NCBI GenBank assembly: GCA_950097015.1
Contig: CATNEN010000029.1
Location: 4,526,001 to 4,590,000 of the forward strand
Length of the DNA stretch: 64,000 nt
Origin: Macrostomum hystrix
Taxonomy: Eukaryota > Animalia > Platyhelminthes
Direction: 5' to 3'
The notes beneath the pieces were generated by a model that was not told the DNA's origin, did no database searches, and worked only from the letters and a program-made list of their open reading frames with translations. This document shows, piece by piece, positions 29,635-47,624 of the stretch. Numbering within the stretch: position 1 is the first letter of the stretch; every line of letters starts with the position of its first letter. A program made the position numbers and the translations under genes.

Positions 29635-29760
29635 ATACTCTTATCAGTTCGGTTGGATGAACAACAAGAAATTCATCAAACAGCTGCAAAAGGACAATAT
29701 TGACTTGGCCATTCTGCAGAGCGAAATCGGTGCGGTCAGCACAAAGAGGCGAAAGAAGTC
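29635..29760 (+). CDS. HVCN1: Hv channel exon (YSYQFGWMNNKKFIKQLQKDNIDLAILQSEIGAVSTKRRKKS)
   Basis: TTCCAG acceptor, GTGAGT donor, 126 bp, phase 2/2. Confidence 0.75.
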
Positions 29761-34100: not shown

Positions 34101-34496
34101 AGAAATCTCCGTGTAAATATTATTCTGGTGAATGGGGTTCTATAGTCCAAACATTGATGCTTACTAATTCTGACTGTATGCAATATTATACGTCATTTTA
34201 TAAATATCATGGAAGATAACTTTTCTACTCTAATTAGTCTACTGTAAGTAGCGTTGAACGCGTTCTCAAGTCTAGTAAAAGAGTGTCGCATATTTTTCAA
34301 GAGTAAAAGAGCAAATGCCGAAGGCAATCTTAAATTATTCAGAGCGCTCTTCTAGAAGACTAGATGGGAAGAGACGTTTCCAGCCTAATGCCCTTGGAAT
34401 CGAGCCCCACATAGAAAATGTGACCTTTCAGCCAATCATCGATAGAAAGAATCATTTCCTTCGCGGCTTATTGCACTTCTCAGATTTGAATGGATT

Positions 34497-34570
34497 GGGG
34501 CTTGTAGCTCACTGGTTAGAGCTTCGGACTTCTGACCGTGTTGGTCTGGAGTTCGATTCTCAACGATTAA
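34497..34570 (+). mobile_element. tRNA-like SINE head (family B)
   Basis: TGTAGCTCACTGGTTAGAGC (A box) and GGAGTTCGATTC (B box); no acceptor stem; similar to the head at 43655. Confidence 0.65.
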
Positions 34571-35765: not shown

Positions 35766-36206
35766 TTTCAACGCTTTTTTAAGAGTATCCGAATTTCGAC
35801 GATTTCCGGAATCAAGTAAATCTAACGATAGCGAAACGCAATCTAACTGAGTCTTCAATTCTAATTCGCAGCCAGTCCTCCTCCTTAATTATCCCATTCT
35901 TATTTGGCTTTGCCCAACGAAATCCCCATTCGCTGGCGAGGCCCAAGATGAGGCAGTCCGGATGGGGGCGTTGCGCGTCCTCTGATCTTAGTCCAGATAA
36001 GAAACGGACGATAGACAATCAGCCAAGGCTACAGAACTTAGATCAACGGAACCCACCCCTGAGAGGAGGGTCATGTCAGAGCCGGGCTCCCTGCTCAGCC
36101 TCCTTCCTGGCAGTCGGCGTCATCCGCTGGACTCGCCGCCAGCCGACGACTATCGACAGCCGCGCAACCTCAAAGCCTCTGGCCAATCCGTCCGCCTGCG
36201 TTTCAG

Positions 36207-36331
36207 ATGGCGCGAGCGACTGCTGCACGTTATCAGGTCCAACGTGGTGCAGATCATCCTGTGCGCCCTGGTGCTCATCGATGCCGGCATTGTCATCGCT
36301 GAGATCATCCTGGAGATCAAGGCCATCACCA
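36207..36331 (+). CDS. HVCN1: Hv channel S0-S1 exon (WRERLLHVIRSNVVQIILCALVLIDAGIVIAEIILEIKAIT)
   Basis: Aligns with human Hv1 S1 ([23 protein letters not shown]), selectivity Asp (D112 equivalent) retained; TTTCAG acceptor phase 2, GTGAGT donor phase 1. Confidence 0.92.
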
Positions 36332-36417
36332 GTGAGTCTATTGTGGGCCCTGGCTGCTATACTTTAACTTGATATTTCAATGAGCTCTGATGAGCGGCCT
36401 TGGATGAAACTGCACTG

Positions 36418-37444: not shown

Positions 37445-38638
37445 GAATCATGGGGAGAATCATGTGGGGAATCATGGGGGGAATCATGTGGGGAATCATG
37501 TGGGGAATCATGTGGGGAATCATGTGGGGAATCATGTGGGGAATCATGTGGGGAATCATGTGGGGAATCATGGGGAGAATCATGGGGAGAATCATGGGGA
37601 GAATCATGGGGAGAATCATGTGGGGAATCATGGGGAGAATCATGTGGGGAATCATGGGGAGAATCACGGGGAGAATCACGGGGAGAATAATGTGGGGAAT
37701 CATGGGGAGAATCATGTGGGGAATCATGGGGAGAATCATGGGGAGAATCATGGGGAGAATCATGGGGAGAATCATGTGGGGAATCATGGGGAGAATCATG
37801 GGGAGAATCATGTGGGGAATCATGGGGAGAATCATGTGGGGAATCATGGGGAGAATCATGGGGAGAATCATGTGGGGAATCATGGCGAGAATCATGGGGA
37901 GAATCATGGGGAGAATCATGGGGAGAATCATGGGGAGAATCATGGGGAGAATCATGTGGGGAATCATGGGGAGAATCATGTGGGGAATCATGGGGAGAAT
38001 CATGGGGAGAATCATGTGGGGAATCATGGCGAGAATCATGGGGAGAATCATGGGGAGAATCATGGGGAGAATCATGGGGAGAATCATGGGCAGAATCATG
38101 GGGAGAATCATGGGGAGAATCATGTGGGGAATCATGGCGAGAATCATGGGGAGAATCATGTGGGGAATCATGGGGAGAATCATGGAGAATCATGGGGAGA
38201 ATCATGGGGAGAATCATGGAGAATCATGGGGAGAATCATGTGGGGAATCATGGGGAGAATCATGGAGAATCATGGGGAGAATCATGGGGAGAATCATGGG
38301 GAGAATCATGGGGAGAATCATGGGCAGAATCATGGGGAGAATCATGGGGAGAATCATGTGGGGAATCATGGCGAGAATCATGGGGAGAATCATGTGGGGA
38401 ATCATGGGGAGAATCATGGAGAATCATGGGGAGAATCATGGGGAGAATCATGGAGAATCATGGGGAGAATCATGTGGGGAATCATGGGGAGAATCATGGA
38501 GAATCATGGGGAGAATCATGGGGAGAATCATGGGCAGAATCATGGGGAGAATCATGGGGAGAATCATGGGGAGAATCATGGGGAGAATCATGGGGGAGAA
38601 TCATGGGGAGAATCATGGGGAGAATCATGGGGAGAATT
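37445..38638. repeat. 12-bp tandem array (GAATCATGGGGA / GAATCATGTGGG)
   Basis: Direct. Confidence 0.96.
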
Positions 38639-39289
38639 ACGTGCGTAAAATGAAAATATAAAGTTGTCCCCAGAAAACCATCTGATGAAGGAATATAATG
38701 GATTGCTAATCTATTCTATATTAATAAAGGAAAATAAATTTATAACACTTGTGGATTGATTATTAACAGGTTAAGTACGAGCTATGTGTTTATGCGATGG
38801 TAGATAAAAACTAGGAAAAAAATTACCTCAAGGTCACTAAGTACATGCCCTTTTCATGCACGAATAATTTTTTTACTATAAACTGAACCAACACAAAAGG
38901 CACAGAAAGATGGTAATCTGGCATGTCACAAAGGAAATACCAGATACAAGATAGATAGATTTGTGTGTGTCGATTGTCAAGATGTGAAAAAATCATGTTT
39001 GAGTACCACAAAAATCCTTACAGGAGTAAAAACTTCTCGCATGAGTAAAAAAGTATATAAAAACGATCAGATCAAGACGAAGCAGGCGCAACAAAAACAA
39101 CAAAATGGAAATGGTCATCGAAATGGTTCACAATTGGTTGCCTGCAAGTCAGCCGACAAGACAGCCGTTATTAGTTCATCCGGTTTCTCAAACTTTCTTA
39201 GGCTTAGTTATCTGATCCTGGGTATAGCGCAAATTTAGTGGGCGATGATAATGTAATGTTGAGGTCGCTGGGTATGGCGGGTGTTATGG

Positions 39290-39455
39290 AGTGAGGTGGG
39301 TGTTATGGAGTGAGGTGGGTGTTACGAAGTGAGGTGGGTGTTACGGAGTGAGGTGGGTGTTACGAAGTGAGGTGGGTGTTACGAAGTGAGGTGGGTGTTA
39401 CGGAGTGAGGTGGGTGTTACGGAGTGAGGCGGGTGTTACGGAGTGAGGTGGGTGC
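39290..39455. repeat. 19-bp array (GGAGTGAGGTGGGTGTTAC)
   Basis: Direct. Confidence 0.9.
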
Positions 39456-39616: not shown

Positions 39617-40167
39617 GTGAAAAAGTAGCCCTCGAAGGGGCCTTTGTAAAGACAGCCGGTTTCGTCAATCGCACTTTTGCACCCTGTCTGGCGGAGCGAG
39701 GCCTCCTTCTGCCGGAGCTCACGCAGCGGCTGATCTCAGCCCCGCAATTCGCCGAACGGCTGGCCTCCAGCATGCTCAGCATTCTCCTTGCCATCGGAGG
39801 TCGAAATGCCACCTCGGCAGCCTGCAACGCCAGCGTTGTTGGCGCGTCCGCCGCCGCCGCCGCGGCAACCACCTCCTCGCCGGCGCGTTCCTCCTCAGCT
39901 GGACGGCCCGCGTCGGCCGCGGCGGCATCGGCAACTCTCCGACTGAGACGGGCGGCAAGCAGCGGCAGCGTCGGCACCGCAGTCGGTGGCAGCGGTGGCG
40001 TCAGGTTTTTCAACTCCTATCAGCAGGATTATAGCCACGCGAAGCTGCTGCACGATGTGTCCTCCGTTCTGCACTACGTCAGCATCGGCATTCTCGGATT
40101 GTTTGTACTCGAAGTGGCGCTTAAAGTCGCATGTCTTGGGAGAAATTTTGTGCGCGAAAAGTTCGAG
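39617..40167 (+). CDS. HVCN1: Hv channel exon: long S1-S2 loop plus S2 (…VSSVLHYVSIGILGLFVLEVALKVACLGRNFVREKFE)
   Basis: S2 matches human FHYMSITILVFFMMEIIFK (H140, F150, E153 and K157 equivalents kept); CACAG acceptor phase 1, GTAAGC donor phase 0. Confidence 0.92.
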
Positions 40168-40261: not shown

Positions 40262-40780
40262 TGTGAGGTGAGTGTTACGGAGTGAGGTGGGTGTTACAGA
40301 TTCAGGTTGGTGTGACGGAGTGAGAAGCCTGTTTCGGTGTGAGGTGGGTGTGAGTGTAACGGAGTGAGCTAGGTGTTTCGGAGTGAGGTGGGTGTTACGG
40401 AGTGAGGTGGGTGTTACGGAGTGAGGTGGGTATTACAGATTCAGGTTGGTGTGACGGAGTGAGAAGCCTGTTTCGGTGTGAGGTGGGTGTGAGTGTAACG
40501 GAGTGAGCTAGGTGTTTCGGAGTGAGGTGGGTGTTACGGAGTGAGGTGGGTGTTACGGAGTGAGGTGGGTGTTACGGAGTGAGGTGGGTATTACGGAGTG
40601 AGGTGCGTGTTACGGAGTGAGGTGGGTTTTACAGATTCAGGTTGGTGTGACGGAGTGAGAAGCCTGCTTCCGTGTGAGGTGGGTGTGAGTGTAACGGAGT
40701 GAGGTGGGTGTTTCGGAGTGAGGTGGGTGTTACTGAGTGAGGTGGGTATTACGGAGTGAGGTGGGTGTTTCGGAGTGAGT
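40262..40780. repeat. 19-bp array (GGAGTGAGGTGGGTGTTAC) with a thrice-repeated longer insert
   Basis: Direct. Confidence 0.88.
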
Positions 40781-41470: not shown

Positions 41471-41769
41471 AGCGCAGATTTGATGTGATAATTGAAAAAA
41501 AATGCAATCAGCATACTTTCTACGTTCTTGTGAATTTTTTCTGTCTGCTGTCAACTGTCTTTTCAAAGTGTACTGACTTGTACTTTCAACTATTCAACAA
41601 CCCGTTCACACTTTCATTGTCTATTCACCAATAAACTTTCCATTCACCAACTCACTGTCTATTCACTCTTTCATTGTCTATTCATCAATTAACTGTTCAT
41701 TCACTAACTCACTGTCTATTCACCAATTCACTTTTTATTCACCAATTAATTTTTTATTCACCAATTCAC

Positions 41770-42795
41770 TGTCCATTCATACATACACTGTCTATTCATA
41801 CATACTTGTACACTGTCTATTCATACATACACTGTCTATTCATACATACACTGTCTATTCATACATACACTGTCTATTCATACATACACTGTCTATTCAT
41901 ACATACACTGTCTATTCATACATACACTGTCTATTCATACATACACTGTCTATTCATACATACACTGTCTATTCATACATACACTGTCTATTCATACATA
42001 CACTGTCTATTCATACATACACTGTCTATTCATACATACACTGTCTATTCATACATACACTGTCTATTCATACATACTTGTACACTGTCTATTCATACAT
42101 ACTTGTACACTGTCTATTCATACATACACTGTCTATTCATACATACACTGTCTATTCATACATACACTGTCTATTCATACATACACTGTCTATTCATACA
42201 TACACTGTCTATTCATACATACTTGTACACTGTCTATTCATACATACACTGTCTATTCATACATACACTGTCTATTCATACATACACTGTCTATTCATAC
42301 ATACACTGTCCATTCATACATACACTGTCTATTCATACATACACTGTCTATTCATACATACACTGTCCATTCATACATACACTGTCTATTCATACATACA
42401 CTGTCTATTCATACATACACTGTCCATTCATACATACACTGTCTATTCATACATACACTGTCTATTCATACATACACTGTCTATTCATACATACTTGTAC
42501 ACTGTCTATTCATACATACACTGTCTATTCATACATACAGTCTATTCATACATACACTGTCTATTCATACATACACTGTCTATTCATACATACACTGTCT
42601 ATTCATACATACACTGTCTATTCATACATACACTGTCCATTCATACATACACTGTCTATTCATACATACACTGTCCATTCATACATACACTGTCTATTCA
42701 TACATACACTGTCTATTCATACATACACTGTCCATTTATACATACACTGTCTATTCATACATACACTGTCTATTCATACATACACTGTCTATTCA
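41770..42795. repeat. 19-bp tandem array (ACTGTCTATTCATACATAC)
   Basis: Direct; degenerate flanks extend to about 41620 and 42860. Confidence 0.95.
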
Positions 42796-42873
42796 CCAAT
42801 TCAGTGCATGTTCATAAACTCATTGACCATTCAAAAATTCACAGTATGTTCACCAATTAACTAATTCGATCAG

Positions 42874-42997
42874 ATCGTGGACGCGGCGGTCATAATGATC
42901 TCCTTCGTGGCAGACATTGTGTTTGTCAAGCTGGAATCCACCGAAGTGTCGGTCATGGTTCTATTCCTACTGTGGCGCATTGTGCGTGTCATCAACG
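42874..42997 (+). CDS. HVCN1: Hv channel S3-S4 exon (IVDAAVIMISFVADIVFVKLESTEVSVMVLFLLWRIVRVING)
   Basis: Missed by the ORF track; aligns with human ILDAVVVVVSFILDIV...LLILLRLWRVARIING; CAG acceptor phase 0, GTGAGT donor phase 1. Confidence 0.93.
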
Positions 42998-43021
42998 GTG
43001 AGTGCGCTGCACGCTCATATT

Positions 43022-43280
43022 TGGAGGTGGGTGCAGTGGAGTGAGGTGGGTGCAGTGAAGTGAGGTGGGTGCAGTGGAGTGAGGTGGGTGTAGTGAAGTG
43101 TTAGTGGGTGCAGTGAAGTGAGGTGGGTGCAGTGCAGTGAGGTGGGTGCAGTGGAGTGAGGTGGGTGCACTAGAGAGGGTGGGTGCGATTGAGAGAGAGG
43201 AGTGAGGTGGTGTAGTGGAGTGAGGTGGGTGCAGTGGAGTGAGGTGGGTGCAGTGGAGTGAGATGGGTGCAGTGGAGTGA
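43022..43280. repeat. 19-bp array (GGAGTGAGGTGGGTGCAGT)
   Basis: Direct. Confidence 0.9.
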
Positions 43281-43356
43281 GGCTCACTCCACGCGCATTA
43301 CATGCAGCAAGGGTACGCGCATTGTCACACTCTCCAACGCGAACATCCCATTGCAG

Positions 43357-43472
43357 GCCTGATGATGCACGAGAAGCAGCGTGACGAATTCCGCATTCAG
43401 CTGCAGAAGCGGGCCAGGCGCATGTCCGAGATGAAGTGCGACACCCTGGAGACTGAGCGCGACTTGCAAGAG
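43357..43472 (+). CDS. HVCN1: Hv channel C-terminal coiled-coil exon (LMMHEKQRDEFRIQLQKRARRMSEMKCDTLETERDLQE)
   Basis: TTGCAG acceptor phase 1, donor at 43473 phase 0; charged helical composition. Confidence 0.85.
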
Positions 43473-43654
43473 GTTTGCAGCTTGAGCTTGTGCTCATATG
43501 CGGCAGCAAATCTATTGCAGCCACAATCAATTTTTAGCAAGAATAATATTTTCCTGAATTGTTCCCTACGCGTGGCTCTGATCTTGTCGAATATTTGAAT
43601 AGCTCCGTTTAAACCGCACATTTAGTTCTTACTAATGCTTTAACGGCTACAAAG

Positions 43655-43820
43655 GAGGTTGTAGCCTTGTGGTTAGAGCTTCGGACTCACGACTTGAAGG
43701 TCGGAGGTTCGATTCTCGGCTCCACTGGAACAATTTGAGTCCTTTAGCAAGACACGTAACTTTGAATTGCTTCCGTTCACCAAGCTGTTAAATGGGTACC
43801 AGCATTAGCTGGGGTAATTG
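43655..43820 (+). mobile_element. tRNA-derived SINE family B with a CORE-like central domain
   Basis: A/B boxes, then GTCCTTTAGCAAGACACGTAAC...GCTGTTAAATGGG, resembling the CORE consensus GTGACCTTGGGCAAGTTACTTAAC...CTGTAAAATGGG. Confidence 0.7.
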
Positions 43821-44179
43821 AAGGTGAGTGTGGCGTTCCCCCTGTCCATGGACTGAACTGTTGTACGCAGCCGATCAGATGCGCCGCGCAATAGCTGCGG
43901 CATTTGCTATCTGGCATAAAATAGGGTCTAGTGTAATCAGTTATTAATTACTACTTATTCAGTTATTCAGTTATTCAGTTATTAAATCAGTTATTATTAT
44001 TTAACGGCAATAATGCCGAATGCATGTCGGCAACCCCCTATTCCATTATGGCAACCATCGAATCCATTGTGGCGTGCTGGCAACCCATATTTCATGGTGG
44101 CAACCCCGATTTAATGGTGGCAACCTCAAATACAATTTAATCGCCCAACGTCTCAATCATACCCTCTCAATTGCTACAG

Positions 44180-44258
44180 AAGCAAATCATGTTTCTGGAG
44201 GAGCTGTGCCGTGAGCTTGGTGCCAGCGACGAACAAATCGGCAACTGCAAGCCTCGCT
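44180..44258 (+). CDS. HVCN1: Hv channel coiled-coil exon (KQIMFLEELCRELGASDEQIGNCKPR)
   Basis: CTACAG acceptor phase 0, GTGAGT donor phase 1. Confidence 0.85.
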
Positions 44259-44394
44259 GTGAGTTTGCCTAATATTCAAATCCTCATTTTATCAGCTGCT
44301 TTGGCTTGTGTTTTGGTGTGGCAGCATCCATAGTCCATGGACTAAAATGGTCTACACAGCCTTTAGATTTGAATTAAATCTTCTCTACTTGATA

Positions 44395-44970
44395 GGTGGG
44401 GTGGGTGCAGTGGAGTGAGGCGGGTGCAGTAGGGTGAGGTGGGTGCAGTGAAGTTAGGTGGGTGCCGTGGAGTGAGGTGGGTGCAGTGTAGTGAGGTGGG
44501 TGCAGTGTAGTGAGGTGGGTGCAGTGTAGTGAGGTGGGTGCAGTGTAGTGAGGTGGGTGCAGTGTAGTGAGGTGGGTGCAGTGTAGTGAGGTGGGTGCCG
44601 TGAAGTGAGGTGGGTGCAGTGTAGTTAGGTGGGCGCAGTGGAGTGAGGTGGGTGCAGTGTAGTGAGGTGGGTGCAGTGTAGTGAGGTGGGTGCAGTGTAG
44701 TGAGGTGGGTGCCGTGAAGTGAGGTGGGTGCAGTGTAGTTAGGTGGGCGCAGTGGAGTGAGGTGGGCGCAGTGGAGTGAGGTGGGTGCAGTGGAGTGAGG
44801 TAGGTGCAGTGGAGTGAGGTGGGTGCAGTGAAGTTAAGTGGGCGCAGTGGAGTGAGGTAGGTGCAGTGGAGTGAGGTGGGTGCAGTGGAGTGAGGTGGGT
44901 GCAGTGGAGCGCGGTAGGTGCCGTGGAGTGAGGTGGGCGCAGTGGAGTGAGGTGGATGCAGTGCAGTGAG
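44395..44970. repeat. 19-bp array (GGAGTGAGGTGGGTGCAGT family)
   Basis: Direct. Confidence 0.92.
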
Positions 44971-45448
44971 GTAGGTCCAGAGAAGTGATTTGGTAAACTT
45001 GATCATCATTTAGTCAAGTAAAAATAATACAAAATCTACGAGTATGTAATTGTCAATTACCCCCTAAAATAATAGTTATTACATATAGTTCCATGCAATA
45101 TGAAGGAGATAACAGAGCTTACGGGTTCTATTTTTAATTCAGCACAGTCAGCACAACTGAGCGAAGCGTCAAGTAAACGAAAAAAGTGTCTAAGGTAAAA
45201 GGGCTCTGAATAGGATATTTTTGTTCATTTATACGAAGTACTATACTAAAAAGGTAATGTTTCTTTCGCTTGAAAATTAGAAAAAGTGGCTCAACCAGAT
45301 TTTCACTAAACTTGCACCATTCGATCAGAAATTTTCCAAAGACGGTGCAAATCTTATGTACGACTAAGAAATTTCTCAATGCTAAAGGAATTAAAAATAT
45401 TCGAAAAGCATGCAGGGGGCCTATAAATCGCTTTAATTTCACCTGCAG

Positions 45449-46007
45449 TCGTCAACATCAGCAAGCGCCAGTCCAATAATGCCCTGAAGTCGATGGCGGC
45501 CATGTCGGCGGGCATTTTCGGTGGCATTGCCGGGGCCCAGCACCGTCGCTCTCTGAGCGTCTTGGCCAGCAATCTGGGCGGAACGCCGCCGAAACACCTC
45601 ACGCCAGTCATCCGGGCTGGACACCATCGCAGAGGATGCCGACTCATCGCGACCGTCTGGCAACGCTGACGGCATCGTTTTAGTTGACGAAGATGACAGA
45701 GAAAGTGACGAAGATTGCGCAAGCGTTGCGGCAACTCCGGCTACAACGGCAATTGAGGAATTGGAAGCGCCGACTGTGATGCTTAACGGGCAGACTAGTC
45801 AAGTCAGGTGCCAGCAGCAGCAGCAGCAGCAGCAGCGATCGTCATCCTCATCTGAATCGCCGGCCTCGGCATCAGGAGCAGTCGCAGGTTGAGCGGCGAC
45901 CTCCCATGCAGCGACCGCGCCGCTTGCTGCCGATTCCAAAGCCGGAAACTGCTTCAACACCGCGCAACGACGACAGTCCATGCGATGAGAATCCTTGGGA
46001 GCTCAGG
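45449..46007 (+). CDS. HVCN1: Hv channel distal C-tail exon, with two apparent +1 frameshifts
   Basis: CTGCAG acceptor phase 1 (FVNISKRQSNNALKSM...); coding-like frame moves +1 near 45577 and again between about 45785 and 45890; donor GTACGC at 46008. Confidence 0.65.
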
Positions 46008-46217
46008 GTACGCAAGCATGGCCTGTTTGATTCGAACAGTCAAGCAAATCGAGTTGAAATTTATATTAATTGAATTATTCTAGTCATATTTTATACCTAC
46101 GCGGCATGGTTCAACTCACGCTTTGAAATTTATCTACACTTTAAGCTCAACGTCGTGTCATTTACCTATCTTATGCGATTATCATCCTCTCTTTTCCTAC
46201 TTTCATCCCAACTATAG

Positions 46218-46259
46218 GTGCAGCTTGTTACCCTCGTCGAGGAAGAATGCTTCGACTGA
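46218..46259 (+). CDS. HVCN1: Probable Hv terminal exon (VQLVTLVEEECFD*)
   Basis: Pyrimidine tract plus TAG acceptor, phase 0, matching the donor at 46008. Confidence 0.5.
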   Translation: MQLVTLVEEECFD

Positions 46260-46304
46260 GTGAGTCGGAAGAAAACAAAAAGGTGTCAGATGGACTGATG
46301 AACT

Positions 46305-46712
46305 GTGACGAGTGCGAGTGACTGGCAGTGTGACTGTGCGAGTGACTGGCAGTGTGACTGTGCGAGTGACTGGCAGTGTGACTGTGCGAGTGACTGGCTG
46401 TGTGACTGTGCGAGTGACTGGCTGTGTGACTGTGCGAGTGACTGACTGTGTGACTATGCGATTGACTGACTGCTGTGTGACTGTGCGAGTGACTGGCTGT
46501 GACTGTGCGAGTGACTGACTGTGTGACTGTGCGAGTGACTGGCTGTGACTGTGCGAGTGACTGGCAGTGTGACTGTGCGAGTGACTGGCAGTGTGACTGT
46601 GCCAGTGACTGGCAGTGTGACTGTGCGAGTGACTGGCTGTGTGACTGTTCGAGTGACTGGCAGTGTGACTGTGCGAGTGACTGGCTGTGTGACTGTTCGA
46701 GTGACTGGCTGT
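46305..46712. repeat. 24-bp tandem array (GTGACTGTGCGAGTGACTGGCAGT)
   Basis: Direct. Confidence 0.92.
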
Positions 46713-47624
46713 GCCATGCTTGTGTTGGCGAGATAATAGGTTAATCAGAAGTGCTCATTCCCGACTGCTTAACTTAATCAAACTGGTAAGACGATTTCTA
46801 AATTTAAAAAATCAGCAGTGAAAATGTGAAAGATTTAAGTCAAAAAGTTTATTAAAAAGTGTAAATTTTTCAGTTTAAGTTCTGTGAGCAAAGGTCAAAG
46901 GTCAAAGCATGTGGTCAATTATGAGATGATTGTACAAAGTCAAGCACTGACACTAAACACAAGAAATCCGGACAGAATTAACCTGTCCGGGTCTTTGTTG
47001 TTTTATCAGAAACTTGCTTGTTGCTTGAAATTTTACTACATTTCATCACATTCCTCGTTTATATGTGAACTGGTTGGCTTGCCACTACTGGCTGCTGATC
47101 CTGTTATCTCCAATAAGTGTAGTTATTTCTTTCAGTCTGTGTGCTTGAGTCACTATGCTGTTTTCGCAAATTAGAAGCAGTTAATTAATGAAAGTTATAC
47201 GTATATACTTGCGCAGCGATAGATAAATTTTTGATTAAAAATTTGTTAATTGAATTGAATAGTACTTTGATCTCGTAAAACTGAAAGACCTAATTAAACG
47301 AGTGTTCCGTGCACTTTTAAACATAACAGATCGCGTGCAACACATTGAATCCTAATCTAAAATGTTAATACAGGAAGATGTCATTGCAACCGGCCCTGGC
47401 AGACGGGACCAAGTTCCTGAGGTGGGCTGTGTTACCGAATACCTGGCCGCAACCTAAGGAGAACTTAACTTTTTTGTTGGTGTGTTGTATGATTATTTTA
47501 ACTGTAACAATTCTTTTGTACTAAATTACTTTTATTCATTGTCATTTGAGAAACAGATAAATGGTAATTCATTAGGGGCTTGAAGGTAACTATAATCAAT
47601 TTAATACAACAAGGGATCACCGAT

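What the first reader, a model, noticed from the sequence alone, without database searches (positions are those of the whole stretch)
42874..42997. Voltage-gated proton channel with a two-arginine S4 (first Arg replaced by Leu): Hv3-like channel in a probable flatworm
Seen: this exon, absent from the ORF track, encodes VMVLFLLWRIVRVING, against the canonical Hv signature RxWRxxRxxN (human LLILLRLWRVARIING). The R205/R1 position is Leu (codon CTA). W207, R208, R211 and N214 equivalents are intact, as are S1 D112, S2 H140/F150/E153/K157 and S3 D174/D185. Known: Aplysia AcHv3 lacks the first S4 Arg and shows proton leak and weak voltage dependence, and R1 neutralisation in human Hv1 opens a resting-state proton shuttle. 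Inference: this is a natural, possibly leaky, weakly voltage-dependent Hv outside molluscs, either an Hv3 orthologue or a convergent loss. Caveat: CTA is one substitution from the Arg codon CGA.
Basis: partly seen in the sequence, partly recalled or inferred. Interest (0 to 1): 0.82.

Follow-up and report, generated by a model that had tools for sequence, protein, structure and literature searches.

The report
Flatworm proton channel lacking first S4 arginine
This is a real, expressed gene of a Macrostomum flatworm for a voltage-gated proton channel with leucine in place of the first of its three voltage-sensing arginines; all flatworm orthologues found and the already described mollusc Hv3 channels share this, so it is a new member of a known odd family, not a one-off.

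Summary
Exon 42874-42997 (+) encodes S3-S4 of an Hv-type proton channel. S4 reads LLWRIVRVING, and CTA (Leu, 42967-42969) sits where human Hv1 has R205. One DNA run and two RNA contig sets from another study match the exon without a difference. The RNA contigs splice it by GT..AG joints to the next exons.

The host is a Macrostomum flatworm: the protein is 77-88% identical to M. lignano 'Voltage-gated hydrogen channel 1'.

The missing R1 is not private to this gene. Every flatworm orthologue found (cestodes, trematodes, M. lignano) has a hydrophobic residue there and an S1-S2 loop of 85-260 aa. So do relatives in an annelid, a nemertean, a brachiopod and a bryozoan. Together with the mollusc LPWR group, which includes Aplysia AcHv3, they form one clade (100/94; still 97 with S4 removed). 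This points to one old loss, not convergence or error.

Unlike AcHv3, this channel has no S4 proline and keeps the gasket residues V109 and F150. Leak and weak voltage dependence are inferred, not shown.

Verdict: a new member of a known kind, of moderate interest. The scan also noted a second LLWRIVRVING copy on another piece of this genome.

The parts
29635..29760 (+). Conserved N-terminal coding exon (..YSYQFGWMNNKKFIKQLQKDNIDLAILQSE..KRRKKS). It begins in mid-codon, so at least one further 5' exon carrying the start codon was not found.
   Evidence: tblastn of cestode and trematode orthologues, E 1e-6 to 3e-9. AG at 29633-4 and GT at 29761-2. The frame joins the S1 exon without a stop.
36207..36331 (+). 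S1 exon (WRERLLHVIRSNVVQIILCALVLIDAGIVIAEIILEIKAIT), with the selectivity-filter Asp (D112 equivalent) in LIDAG. The frame is also open upstream to an ATG at 36073, which may be an alternative first exon.
   Evidence: AG at 36205-6 and GT at 36332-3. Orthologues align across the 29760>36207 join (RRRRS|WR..). D112, V109 and E119 equivalents are shown.
39617..40167 (+). Exon for the roughly 145-aa extracellular S1-S2 loop and S2 (..VLHYVSIGILGLFVLEVALKVACLGRNFVREKFE), with the H140, F150, E153 and K157 equivalents.
   Evidence: AG at 39615-6 and GT at 40168-9. The M. lignano protein P0001 reads KAITSEKVALEGAF.. across the join. An RNA contig of X3 carries the end of this exon fused to 42874 (loose end).
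42874..42997 (+). The finding: the S3-S4 exon, with S4 = LLWRIVRVIN(G).
   Evidence: The exon boundaries fall at the same protein positions in the Rodentolepis and Clonorchis orthologues.
42967..42969 (+). CTA = Leu at the position of human R205 (R1).
   Evidence: Alignment to 5oqk. No other letter in DNA run X1 or in RNA contigs X2 and X3. Orthologues use CTG for the same Leu.
43357..43472 (+). Exon that completes Gly215 and encodes the post-S4 helix that aligns with the Hv1 coiled coil (LMMHEKQRDEFRIQLQKRARRMSEMKCDTLETERDLQE).
   Evidence: RNA joint 42997>43357, GT..AG, in X2 and X3. It is 97.5% identical to M. lignano P0002.
44180..44258 (+). C-terminal exon (KQIMFLEELCRELGASDEQIGNCKPR), conserved in flatworm orthologues.
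   Evidence: RNA joints 43472>44180 and 44258>45449, GT..AG, in X2. tblastn of orthologues.
45449..46007 (+). Cytoplasmic tail exon (FVNISKRQSNNALKSMAAMSAGIFGGIAGA.., then an acidic, Ser- and Gln-rich tail). The window has one more base than the reads at 45591 and at 45874, and each shifts the frame.
   Evidence: RNA contigs X2 45449-45803 and X3 45456-45743 and 45886-46008. Orthologues align to 45442-45585.
47374..47457 (+). Probable last coding exon (EDVIATGPGRRDQVPEVGCVTEYLAAT, then stop), in the frame supported by the reads.
   Evidence: The loose end of the X3 RNA contig behind 46008 matches the window at 47375 just after an AG.

Best explanation
The exon is part of an expressed gene of at least nine exons (about 29.6-47.5 kb, + strand) in a Macrostomum flatworm. 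The gene encodes a voltage-sensor-only proton channel of the Hv family. It belongs to an old lophotrochozoan branch in which the outermost S4 arginine (R1) was replaced by a hydrophobic residue and a long extracellular S1-S2 loop was inserted. Mollusc Hv3 channels, including Aplysia AcHv3, are the proline-bearing part of that branch. This gene sits in the proline-less part, inside a flatworm-wide subclade. How it most likely works (inferred): protons pass through the S1-S4 bundle, and selectivity comes from the S1 Asp pairing with R2 or R3. S4 carries two charges instead of three, so the conductance should depend less steeply on voltage. The resting-state D112-R1 salt bridge cannot form. In human R205W and in AcHv3 that goes with faster opening and a proton leak through nominally closed channels. 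Because this channel keeps an intact hydrophobic gasket (V109, F150, V177, I178) and has no helix-breaking Pro, any leak should be smaller than in AcHv3. The helix after S4 aligns with the Hv1 coiled coil, which suggests a dimer. Shown here: sequence, splicing, expression, residues and phylogeny. Inferred: conduction, gating and leak. I put about 0.85 on the identity and descent, and about 0.5 on leak or clearly weakened voltage dependence.
For: Sequence and splice sites. Hv identity: the best solved-structure matches are human Hv1 5oqk (E 5e-14) and mouse Hv1 3wkv, far ahead of Ci-VSP. All Hv landmark residues except R1 are present. Host: the three hits are M. lignano 'Voltage-gated hydrogen channel 1' proteins, 77-88% identical to the spliced model, and two of them carry LFLLWRIVRVING. 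Expression and codon: spliced RNA contigs from two runs of a second study have GT..AG joints and no difference in the exon. Family: phmmer against 1.84 billion representatives found 731 relatives. The nearest are cestode and trematode proteins with L[LIV]WRxxR, followed by Owenia, Lingula, Tubulanus and Bugula. P0082 is the 980-aa Aplysia protein with L429 and P430, i.e. AcHv3. All 58 R1-less proteins with a detectable S1 have S1-S2 loops of 85-575 aa, against a median of about 5 aa in R1-bearing ones. Trees built without the R1 and R1+1 columns put all R1-less rows on one side of a single branch (SH-aLRT 98; UFBoot 100 / SH-aLRT 94). The branch is still at 97 with the whole of S4 removed. The other side holds sponge, cnidarian, echinoderm, hemichordate and crustacean Hv1, so the root lies there. 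Function of relatives: AcHv3 is H+ selective, leaky, and changes about e-fold per 60 mV. Human R205W leaks when closed and has weakened voltage dependence.
Against: No electrophysiology exists for any proline-less R1-less Hv. AcHv3 also differs at the gasket: Thr at V109 and Leu at F150. All 38 LPWR-type rows lack Phe at F150. Its authors could not say whether R1, the proline or the gasket causes the leak, and they note that no leak was reported for Arg-to-Ala mutants of S4. The alignment used for the trees is short (139-158 columns), the LPWR clade sits on a long branch, and the careful run's bootstrap had not fully settled. Over the voltage-sensor domain the window protein is more identical to a mammalian Hv1 (36%) than to AcHv3 (28%). 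The 5' end of the gene is unresolved and the 3' tail is uncertain.
Confidence: 0.8

Rival explanations
1. The identity and descent are as above, but the channel gates like an ordinary Hv1: steep voltage dependence and tightly closed. Its intact hydrophobic gasket, and the absence of the S4 proline, would compensate for the missing R1.
For: V109, F150, V177 and I178 are kept, whereas the leaky AcHv3 has Thr and Leu at the first two positions. [quoted passage not shown]
Against: Human R205W has an intact gasket and still leaks and loses voltage dependence. Two charges instead of three must lower the gating charge unless another residue takes over, and no extra basic residue is seen in S4.
Confidence: 0.35
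2. Convergent loss: flatworms lost R1 independently of the mollusc Hv3 lineage, and the tree grouping is an artefact.
For: Identity to AcHv3 is low (28%), the LPWR clade sits on a long branch, and there are few alignment columns.
Against: One branch unites all R1-less rows (100/94) and survives removal of all S4 columns (97). The long S1-S2 insertion, which is not used in the tree, is shared by all of them. Annelid, nemertean, brachiopod and bryozoan intermediates without Pro bridge the two groups.
Confidence: 0.07
3. A non-conducting voltage sensor (TMEM266-like) or a decaying gene, rather than a proton channel.
For: NCBI names some Lingula isoforms of the sister group 'transmembrane protein 266'. 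As assembled, the window has a frameshift in the tail.
Against: The S1 Asp, which distinguishes Hv from TMEM266, is present. AcHv3, with the same S4 type, conducts protons. The gene is spliced and expressed, and the frameshifting bases are absent from the reads. The voltage-sensor domain is about 95% identical to M. lignano's, and the Leu persists under synonymous change.
Confidence: 0.07
4. A sequencing or assembly error, or a private allele, of a canonical CGA (Arg) codon.
For: CTA is one substitution from CGA. The window does show indel differences from the reads elsewhere in the gene.
Against: There is no other letter at the codon in one DNA data set and two RNA data sets. Leu is present in M. 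lignano copies, in every flatworm orthologue found, and in a second copy noted in this genome.
Confidence: 0.01

Closest known systems
Proline-less, large-loop 'unconventional' Hv channels of Annelida, Bryozoa and Nemertea (mentioned in Chaves et al. 2023, PMC10377628)
   Same: [quoted passage not shown] R1 is hydrophobic in the representatives I retrieved.
   Different: Platyhelminthes are not named in that group. For flatworms the review describes a different Schistosoma pair that keeps R1 and has a long S3-S4 loop. None of these channels has been recorded electrically.
Aplysia californica AcHv3 / mollusc Hv3 family (Chaves et al. 2022, PMC10911540)
   Same: R1 is replaced by Leu, while W, R2, R3, N214 and the S1 Asp are kept. 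There is a very long S1-S2 loop and a coiled coil after S4, and they share a clade.
   Different: AcHv3 has LPWR (Pro430), Thr at V109, Leu at F150 and Ser at G215. Its S1-S2 loop is 299 aa and its C-terminus 535 aa. The flatworm channel has LLWR, V109, F150 and G215, a loop of about 145 aa and a shorter tail. Identity over the voltage-sensor domain is only 28%.
Human Hv1 mutants at R205 (R205W in PMC11853527; R205H as cited in PMC10911540)
   Same: These are engineered or somatic losses of R1 in an otherwise canonical channel with an intact gasket, which is the closest mimic of this natural sequence. R205W leaks when closed, opens faster and has weaker voltage dependence.
   Different: The replacing residue is Trp or His, not Leu. 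These mutants also have the human short-loop background.
Canonical Hv1 / HVCN1 (structures 5oqk, 3wkv)
   Same: It has the four-helix voltage-sensor-only architecture with D112, F150, E153, K157, D174, D185, W207, R208, R211 and N214, and a coiled coil after S4.
   Different: Canonical Hv1 has RxWRxxR and an S1-S2 loop of a few residues. H193 of the human Zn2+ site has no counterpart here.
TMEM266 / C15orf27
   Same: It is a voltage-sensor-only protein related to Hv1, and its name is applied by NCBI to some Lingula isoforms of the sister group.
   Different: It does not conduct, and it lacks the S1 Asp that was identified as the Hv selectivity filter. The window protein has that Asp.

Membership tests
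Voltage-gated proton channel (Hv / HVCN1) family | A voltage-sensor-only protein: S1-S4 with no S5-S6 pore domain. | tested here: met
   S1 and S2-S4 align to an Hv profile. The RNA contig joins the S4 exon directly to the coiled-coil and tail exons. No pore-domain exon is present in the spliced model.
Voltage-gated proton channel (Hv / HVCN1) family | An acidic selectivity-filter residue in S1 (human D112). | tested here: met
   Asp in LIDAG aligns with D112.
Voltage-gated proton channel (Hv / HVCN1) family | The S4 signature RxWRxxR, with the conserved Trp. | tested here: not met
   S4 reads LLWRIVR. W, R2 and R3 are present but R1 is Leu. The same departure defines the functional channel AcHv3, so this excludes 'canonical Hv1', not 'Hv family'.
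Voltage-gated proton channel (Hv / HVCN1) family | Closest sequence relatives are proven Hv channels. | tested here: met
   PDB best hits are human Hv1 (E 5e-14) and mouse Hv1 (2e-12), against Ci-VSP at 1.5e-3. It shares a clade with AcHv3.
Voltage-gated proton channel (Hv / HVCN1) family | Proton-selective, voltage- and delta-pH-dependent conductance. | not testable with these tools
   This needs heterologous expression and patch clamp.
Mollusc-type Hv3 (AcHv3-like, xPWRxxR) | R1 replaced by a non-basic residue. | tested here: met
   Leu at R205.
Mollusc-type Hv3 (AcHv3-like, xPWRxxR) | A proline directly before the S4 Trp. | tested here: not met
   Leu is at that position, as in all flatworm orthologues. 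I therefore do not file it as Hv3 in the strict sense.
Mollusc-type Hv3 (AcHv3-like, xPWRxxR) | [quoted passage not shown] | tested here: met
   About 145 aa between the S1 and S2 profile matches. R1-less relatives have 85-575 aa. M. lignano P0001 reads across the exon join.
Mollusc-type Hv3 (AcHv3-like, xPWRxxR) | Large intracellular domains. | tested here: inconclusive
   The tail after S4 is roughly 120-270 aa, depending on two disputed bases. That is much shorter than AcHv3's 535 aa. The N-terminus is incomplete.
Proline-less large-loop lophotrochozoan Hv group (Chaves 2023 review) | A large S1-S2 loop, no S4 proline, lophotrochozoan host, and relatedness to Hv3. | tested here: met
   Named neighbours are Owenia, Lingula, Tubulanus and Bugula.

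The most novel reading that the evidence does not exclude
The flatworm branch may preserve the first step in the evolution of Hv3: R1 lost and the loop inserted, but the gasket and S4 helix still canonical. If so, this channel would be a natural 'R1-only' variant. It would show whether loss of R1 by itself gives a constitutive proton leak and shallow gating in a native protein. Flatworms might also have no three-arginine Hv at all, because the only other flatworm Hv-like genes shown in the literature have lost R2 or R3 (RLWYIKE.., RLWRVIF).
Probability: 0.35. Interest if true: 0.6.

Novelty: new member of a known kind. Interest (0 to 1): 0.42.

Why it matters
AcHv3 is the only R1-less proton channel that has been recorded. 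Its authors could not tell whether its closed-state leak and roughly 60 mV per e-fold gating come from the missing arginine, from the S4 proline, or from a breached hydrophobic gasket. The flatworm channel carries only the first of these three changes. Expressing it alongside an L-to-R revertant would separate the causes in a natural protein. It also extends the unconventional Hv branch to Platyhelminthes, including Schistosoma, Fasciola, Clonorchis and tapeworms. In those parasites a proton pathway unlike the host's Hv1 could be of physiological or pharmacological interest. Macrostomum is a laboratory model flatworm, so a loss-of-function test in the animal should be practical.

Tried and rejected
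- **First gene model.** My first model was wrong: start at ATG 36073, and the S4 exon joined directly to the exon at 45449, giving ..RVINV... Orthologue tblastn and RNA joints show exons at 43357 and 44180 in between, and a conserved upstream exon at 29635.
- **Alternative acceptor at 40024.** This would have removed the long loop. I rejected it because the phase does not fit the donor at 36332, and M. lignano P0001 reads through the loop.
- **Pfam on single exons.** No hits; the pieces are too short.
- **The look-up of encoding contigs for the M. lignano proteins P0002 and P0003.** Not on record, so the M. lignano codon could not be read. The Rodentolepis and Clonorchis loci were used instead.
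- **High-copy intron element at 43619-43942.** No tRNA and no Rfam family.
- **AU test of convergent loss.** Not run, because the only simple constraint is also satisfied by a single-loss tree. I rebuilt the tree without S4 instead.
- **Structure prediction.** Not run. The spliced window protein has no reference, and the M. lignano full-length model P0001 has a garbled S4 (LLCAHCRVING).
- **A three-arginine Hv in Macrostomum.** I could not establish whether one exists.

Full report
**Observation.** On the + strand an AG at 42872-3 and a GT at 42998-9 bracket a 124-nt exon. It translates to IVDAAVIMISFVADIVFVKLESTEVSVMVLFLLWRIVRVIN plus one base. phmmer against all PDB chains finds only human Hv1 (5oqk) and the mouse Hv1 chimera (3wkv). 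It aligns LFLLWRIVRVIN with LLRLWRVARIIN, so the CTA at 42967-42969 stands at R205 (R1), and W207, R208, R211 and N214 are kept. The one nuance is that Gly215 is completed across a splice (g + gc at 43357-8) rather than by the intron's ggt.

**Gene model.** My first model was partly wrong and was corrected by two independent lines of evidence.

- A word search with the long exon-2 frame found three Macrostomum lignano UniRef proteins called 'Voltage-gated hydrogen channel 1'. Two carry LFLLWRIVRVING followed by GLMMHEKQRDEF.., which placed the next exon at 43357-43472.
- tblastn of flatworm orthologues on the window revealed further conserved exons at 29635-29760, 44180-44258 and 45449 onward. 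It also showed that the S1 exon is entered at 36207 rather than from the ATG at 36073.

Laying contigs of four public runs on 42863-46100 showed that X2 and X3 hold spliced RNA contigs. X2 and X3 come from a 2020 study, different from that of the DNA run X1. The joints are 42997>43357, 43472>44180 and 44258>45449, all GT..AG. The end of exon 2 is fused to 42874, and a further joint runs from 46007 to 47374. The spliced model reads without a stop from the upstream exon through S1-S4 and the coiled-coil region. The first exon with the start codon was not found.

**Codon check.** X1 (DNA) and the X2 and X3 RNA contigs cover the S3-S4 exon with no other letter. The Leu is therefore neither an assembly error nor unexpressed. 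In Rodentolepis nana and Clonorchis sinensis the same position is Leu, encoded by CTG. The S3-S4 exon there begins and ends at the same protein positions. Leu has thus been kept through synonymous change.

**What it is.** In a profile alignment the window protein has the equivalents of V109, D112, E119, H140, F150, E153, K157, E171, D174, V177, I178, D185, W207, R208, R211, N214 and G215. Only R205 is changed. The S2-to-coiled-coil part of the M. lignano orthologue matches human Hv1 at E 5e-14, against 1.5e-3 for the Ci-VSP sensor. The S1 Asp is the residue that separates Hv channels from the non-conducting TMEM266. About 145 residues lie between S1 and S2. Canonical Hv1 has a handful.

**Relatives.** phmmer of the S2-coiled-coil part against 1.84 billion cluster representatives gave 731 hits at E<=1e-3.

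- The best hits are long proteins from cestodes (Hymenolepis, Rodentolepis, Spirometra, Sparganum) and trematodes (Calicophoron, Clonorchis, Fasciola, Schistosoma mekongi, Heterobilharzia). All have L[LIV]WRxxR.
- Next come Owenia (annelid), Lingula (brachiopod), Tubulanus (nemertean) and Bugula (bryozoan), with L/I at R1 and no proline.
- Then comes a large LPWR/VPWR group that includes the 980-aa Aplysia protein with L429 and P430, i.e. AcHv3 (paper data).
- All 58 R1-less proteins with a detectable S1 have S1-S2 loops of 85-575 aa.

**Phylogeny.** Maximum-likelihood trees of 120 rows were built with the R1 and following columns left out. They put all R1-less rows on one side of a single branch: SH-aLRT 98, and UFBoot 100 / SH-aLRT 94. 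The branch survives removal of all 21 S4 columns (97). The other side contains sponge, cnidarian, echinoderm, hemichordate, crustacean, rotifer and bivalve Hv1, so the root lies there and the R1-less set is a clade. Within it the flatworm sequences form a subclade (100/99) that contains the window protein. Two cestode paralogue lines, both R1-less, lie inside that subclade.

**Comparison with the literature.**

- Chaves et al. 2022 described AcHv3 as H+ selective, leaky, and changing only e-fold per about 60 mV. They left open whether the missing R1, the proline or a gasket breach is responsible.
- Their 2023 review states that large-loop Hv channels without the S4 proline exist in annelids, bryozoans and nemerteans. 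It proposes that the loop arose in an early lophotrochozoan.
- For Platyhelminthes the review describes a different pair in Schistosoma. Its supplement shows these keep R1 but lack R2 or R3. A Macrostomum accession is listed there without comment.
- A 2012 paper merely counts three HVCN1-like transcripts in M. lignano.
- I found no paper that notes R1-less Hv channels in flatworms.

**A difference that matters.** All 38 LPWR-type sequences lack Phe at F150 (Leu or Met instead). Most have Asn, Cys or Thr at V109, and AcHv3 itself has Thr and Leu. These are two of the four hydrophobic-gasket residues, and reducing their hydrophobicity causes closed-state proton leak in human Hv1. The window protein and the flatworm clade keep V109, F150, V/I177 and I178, and have no proline. 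Human R205W, which has an intact gasket, nevertheless leaks when closed, opens faster and loses voltage dependence. Its authors attribute this to loss of the D112-R1 interaction.

My mechanistic expectation is therefore a proton-selective channel with reduced gating charge and probably some resting leak, milder than in AcHv3. This is inference. The rival view, that the intact gasket keeps the channel tight, is held at about one in three.

**Host.** The nearest proteins are M. lignano's, at 77-88% identity, so this is a Macrostomum species or a divergent paralogue. Run and organism names were coded. A 2023 two-species Macrostomum genome paper appears in the literature search, but I cannot tie the window to it. 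Earlier notes of this scan report a second LLWRIVRVING locus, an array of alternative first exons at that locus, and two other 'rewired Hv-like S4' genes on other pieces of this genome. I could not check any of these.

**Verdict.** It is a real and tidy case, but it is a lineage-wide feature of a family that is already described, and the flatworm proteins already sit in public databases under the name Hv1. Its value is as a natural 'R1-only' variant for separating the causes of the Hv3 phenotype, and as the first explicit placement of flatworms in that branch.

Noticed in passing
window 45591 and 45874: The window has one base more than the reads at each place. At 45591 the base is absent from DNA run X1 and from both RNA contig sets. 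At 45874 it is absent from X1, and RNA does not cover the place. As assembled, the ORF stops at 45667-9. Without the two bases it runs through the 46007>47374 splice to a stop at 47455-7. These are probably assembly indels, or a frameshifted allele of the C-terminal tail.
   Followed up: partly
window 43619-43942 (intron between the coiled-coil exon and the next): This is a very high-copy element. Summed contig depth is 186,000-366,000 in the DNA run and about 1,400 in the RNA runs, with many rearranged joints. ARAGORN and Rfam find nothing. Related translated motifs also occur near 34480-34570.
   Followed up: partly
window 39279-39454, 40263-40779, 41613-42862, 43024-43282, 44396-44988; also 37445-38637: Minisatellites with a 19-bp period (one has a 12-bp period) fill much of almost every intron and often abut the exons. 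Several share the unit GTGAGGTGGGTG....
   Followed up: no
window 29635-29760 and 36001-36206: There is a conserved N-terminal exon 6.4 kb upstream of the S1 exon, and the start-codon exon is still missing. The frame upstream of the S1 exon is open back to an ATG at 36073, which could be an alternative first exon.
   Followed up: partly
related proteins P0035-P0148 (LPWR group) against P0004-P0014 (flatworms): The mollusc-type LPWR channels have all lost Phe at F150, and most have lost Val at V109. Parasitic flatworm orthologues have replaced E153 by Cys, Thr, Gln or Tyr, while Macrostomum keeps Glu. The nemertean Lineus longissimus has an LPWR channel, outside the phyla listed for the proline type in the 2023 review.
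   Followed up: partly
window 39617-40060 (S1-S2 loop): The loop has three N-glycosylation sequons (NRT, NAT, NAS), an Ala/Ser/Gly-rich low-complexity core and an RLRR motif. Its outer parts are conserved with M. lignano (67% over 72 aa), while the core varies. This is the subject of another first-stage note.
   Followed up: no
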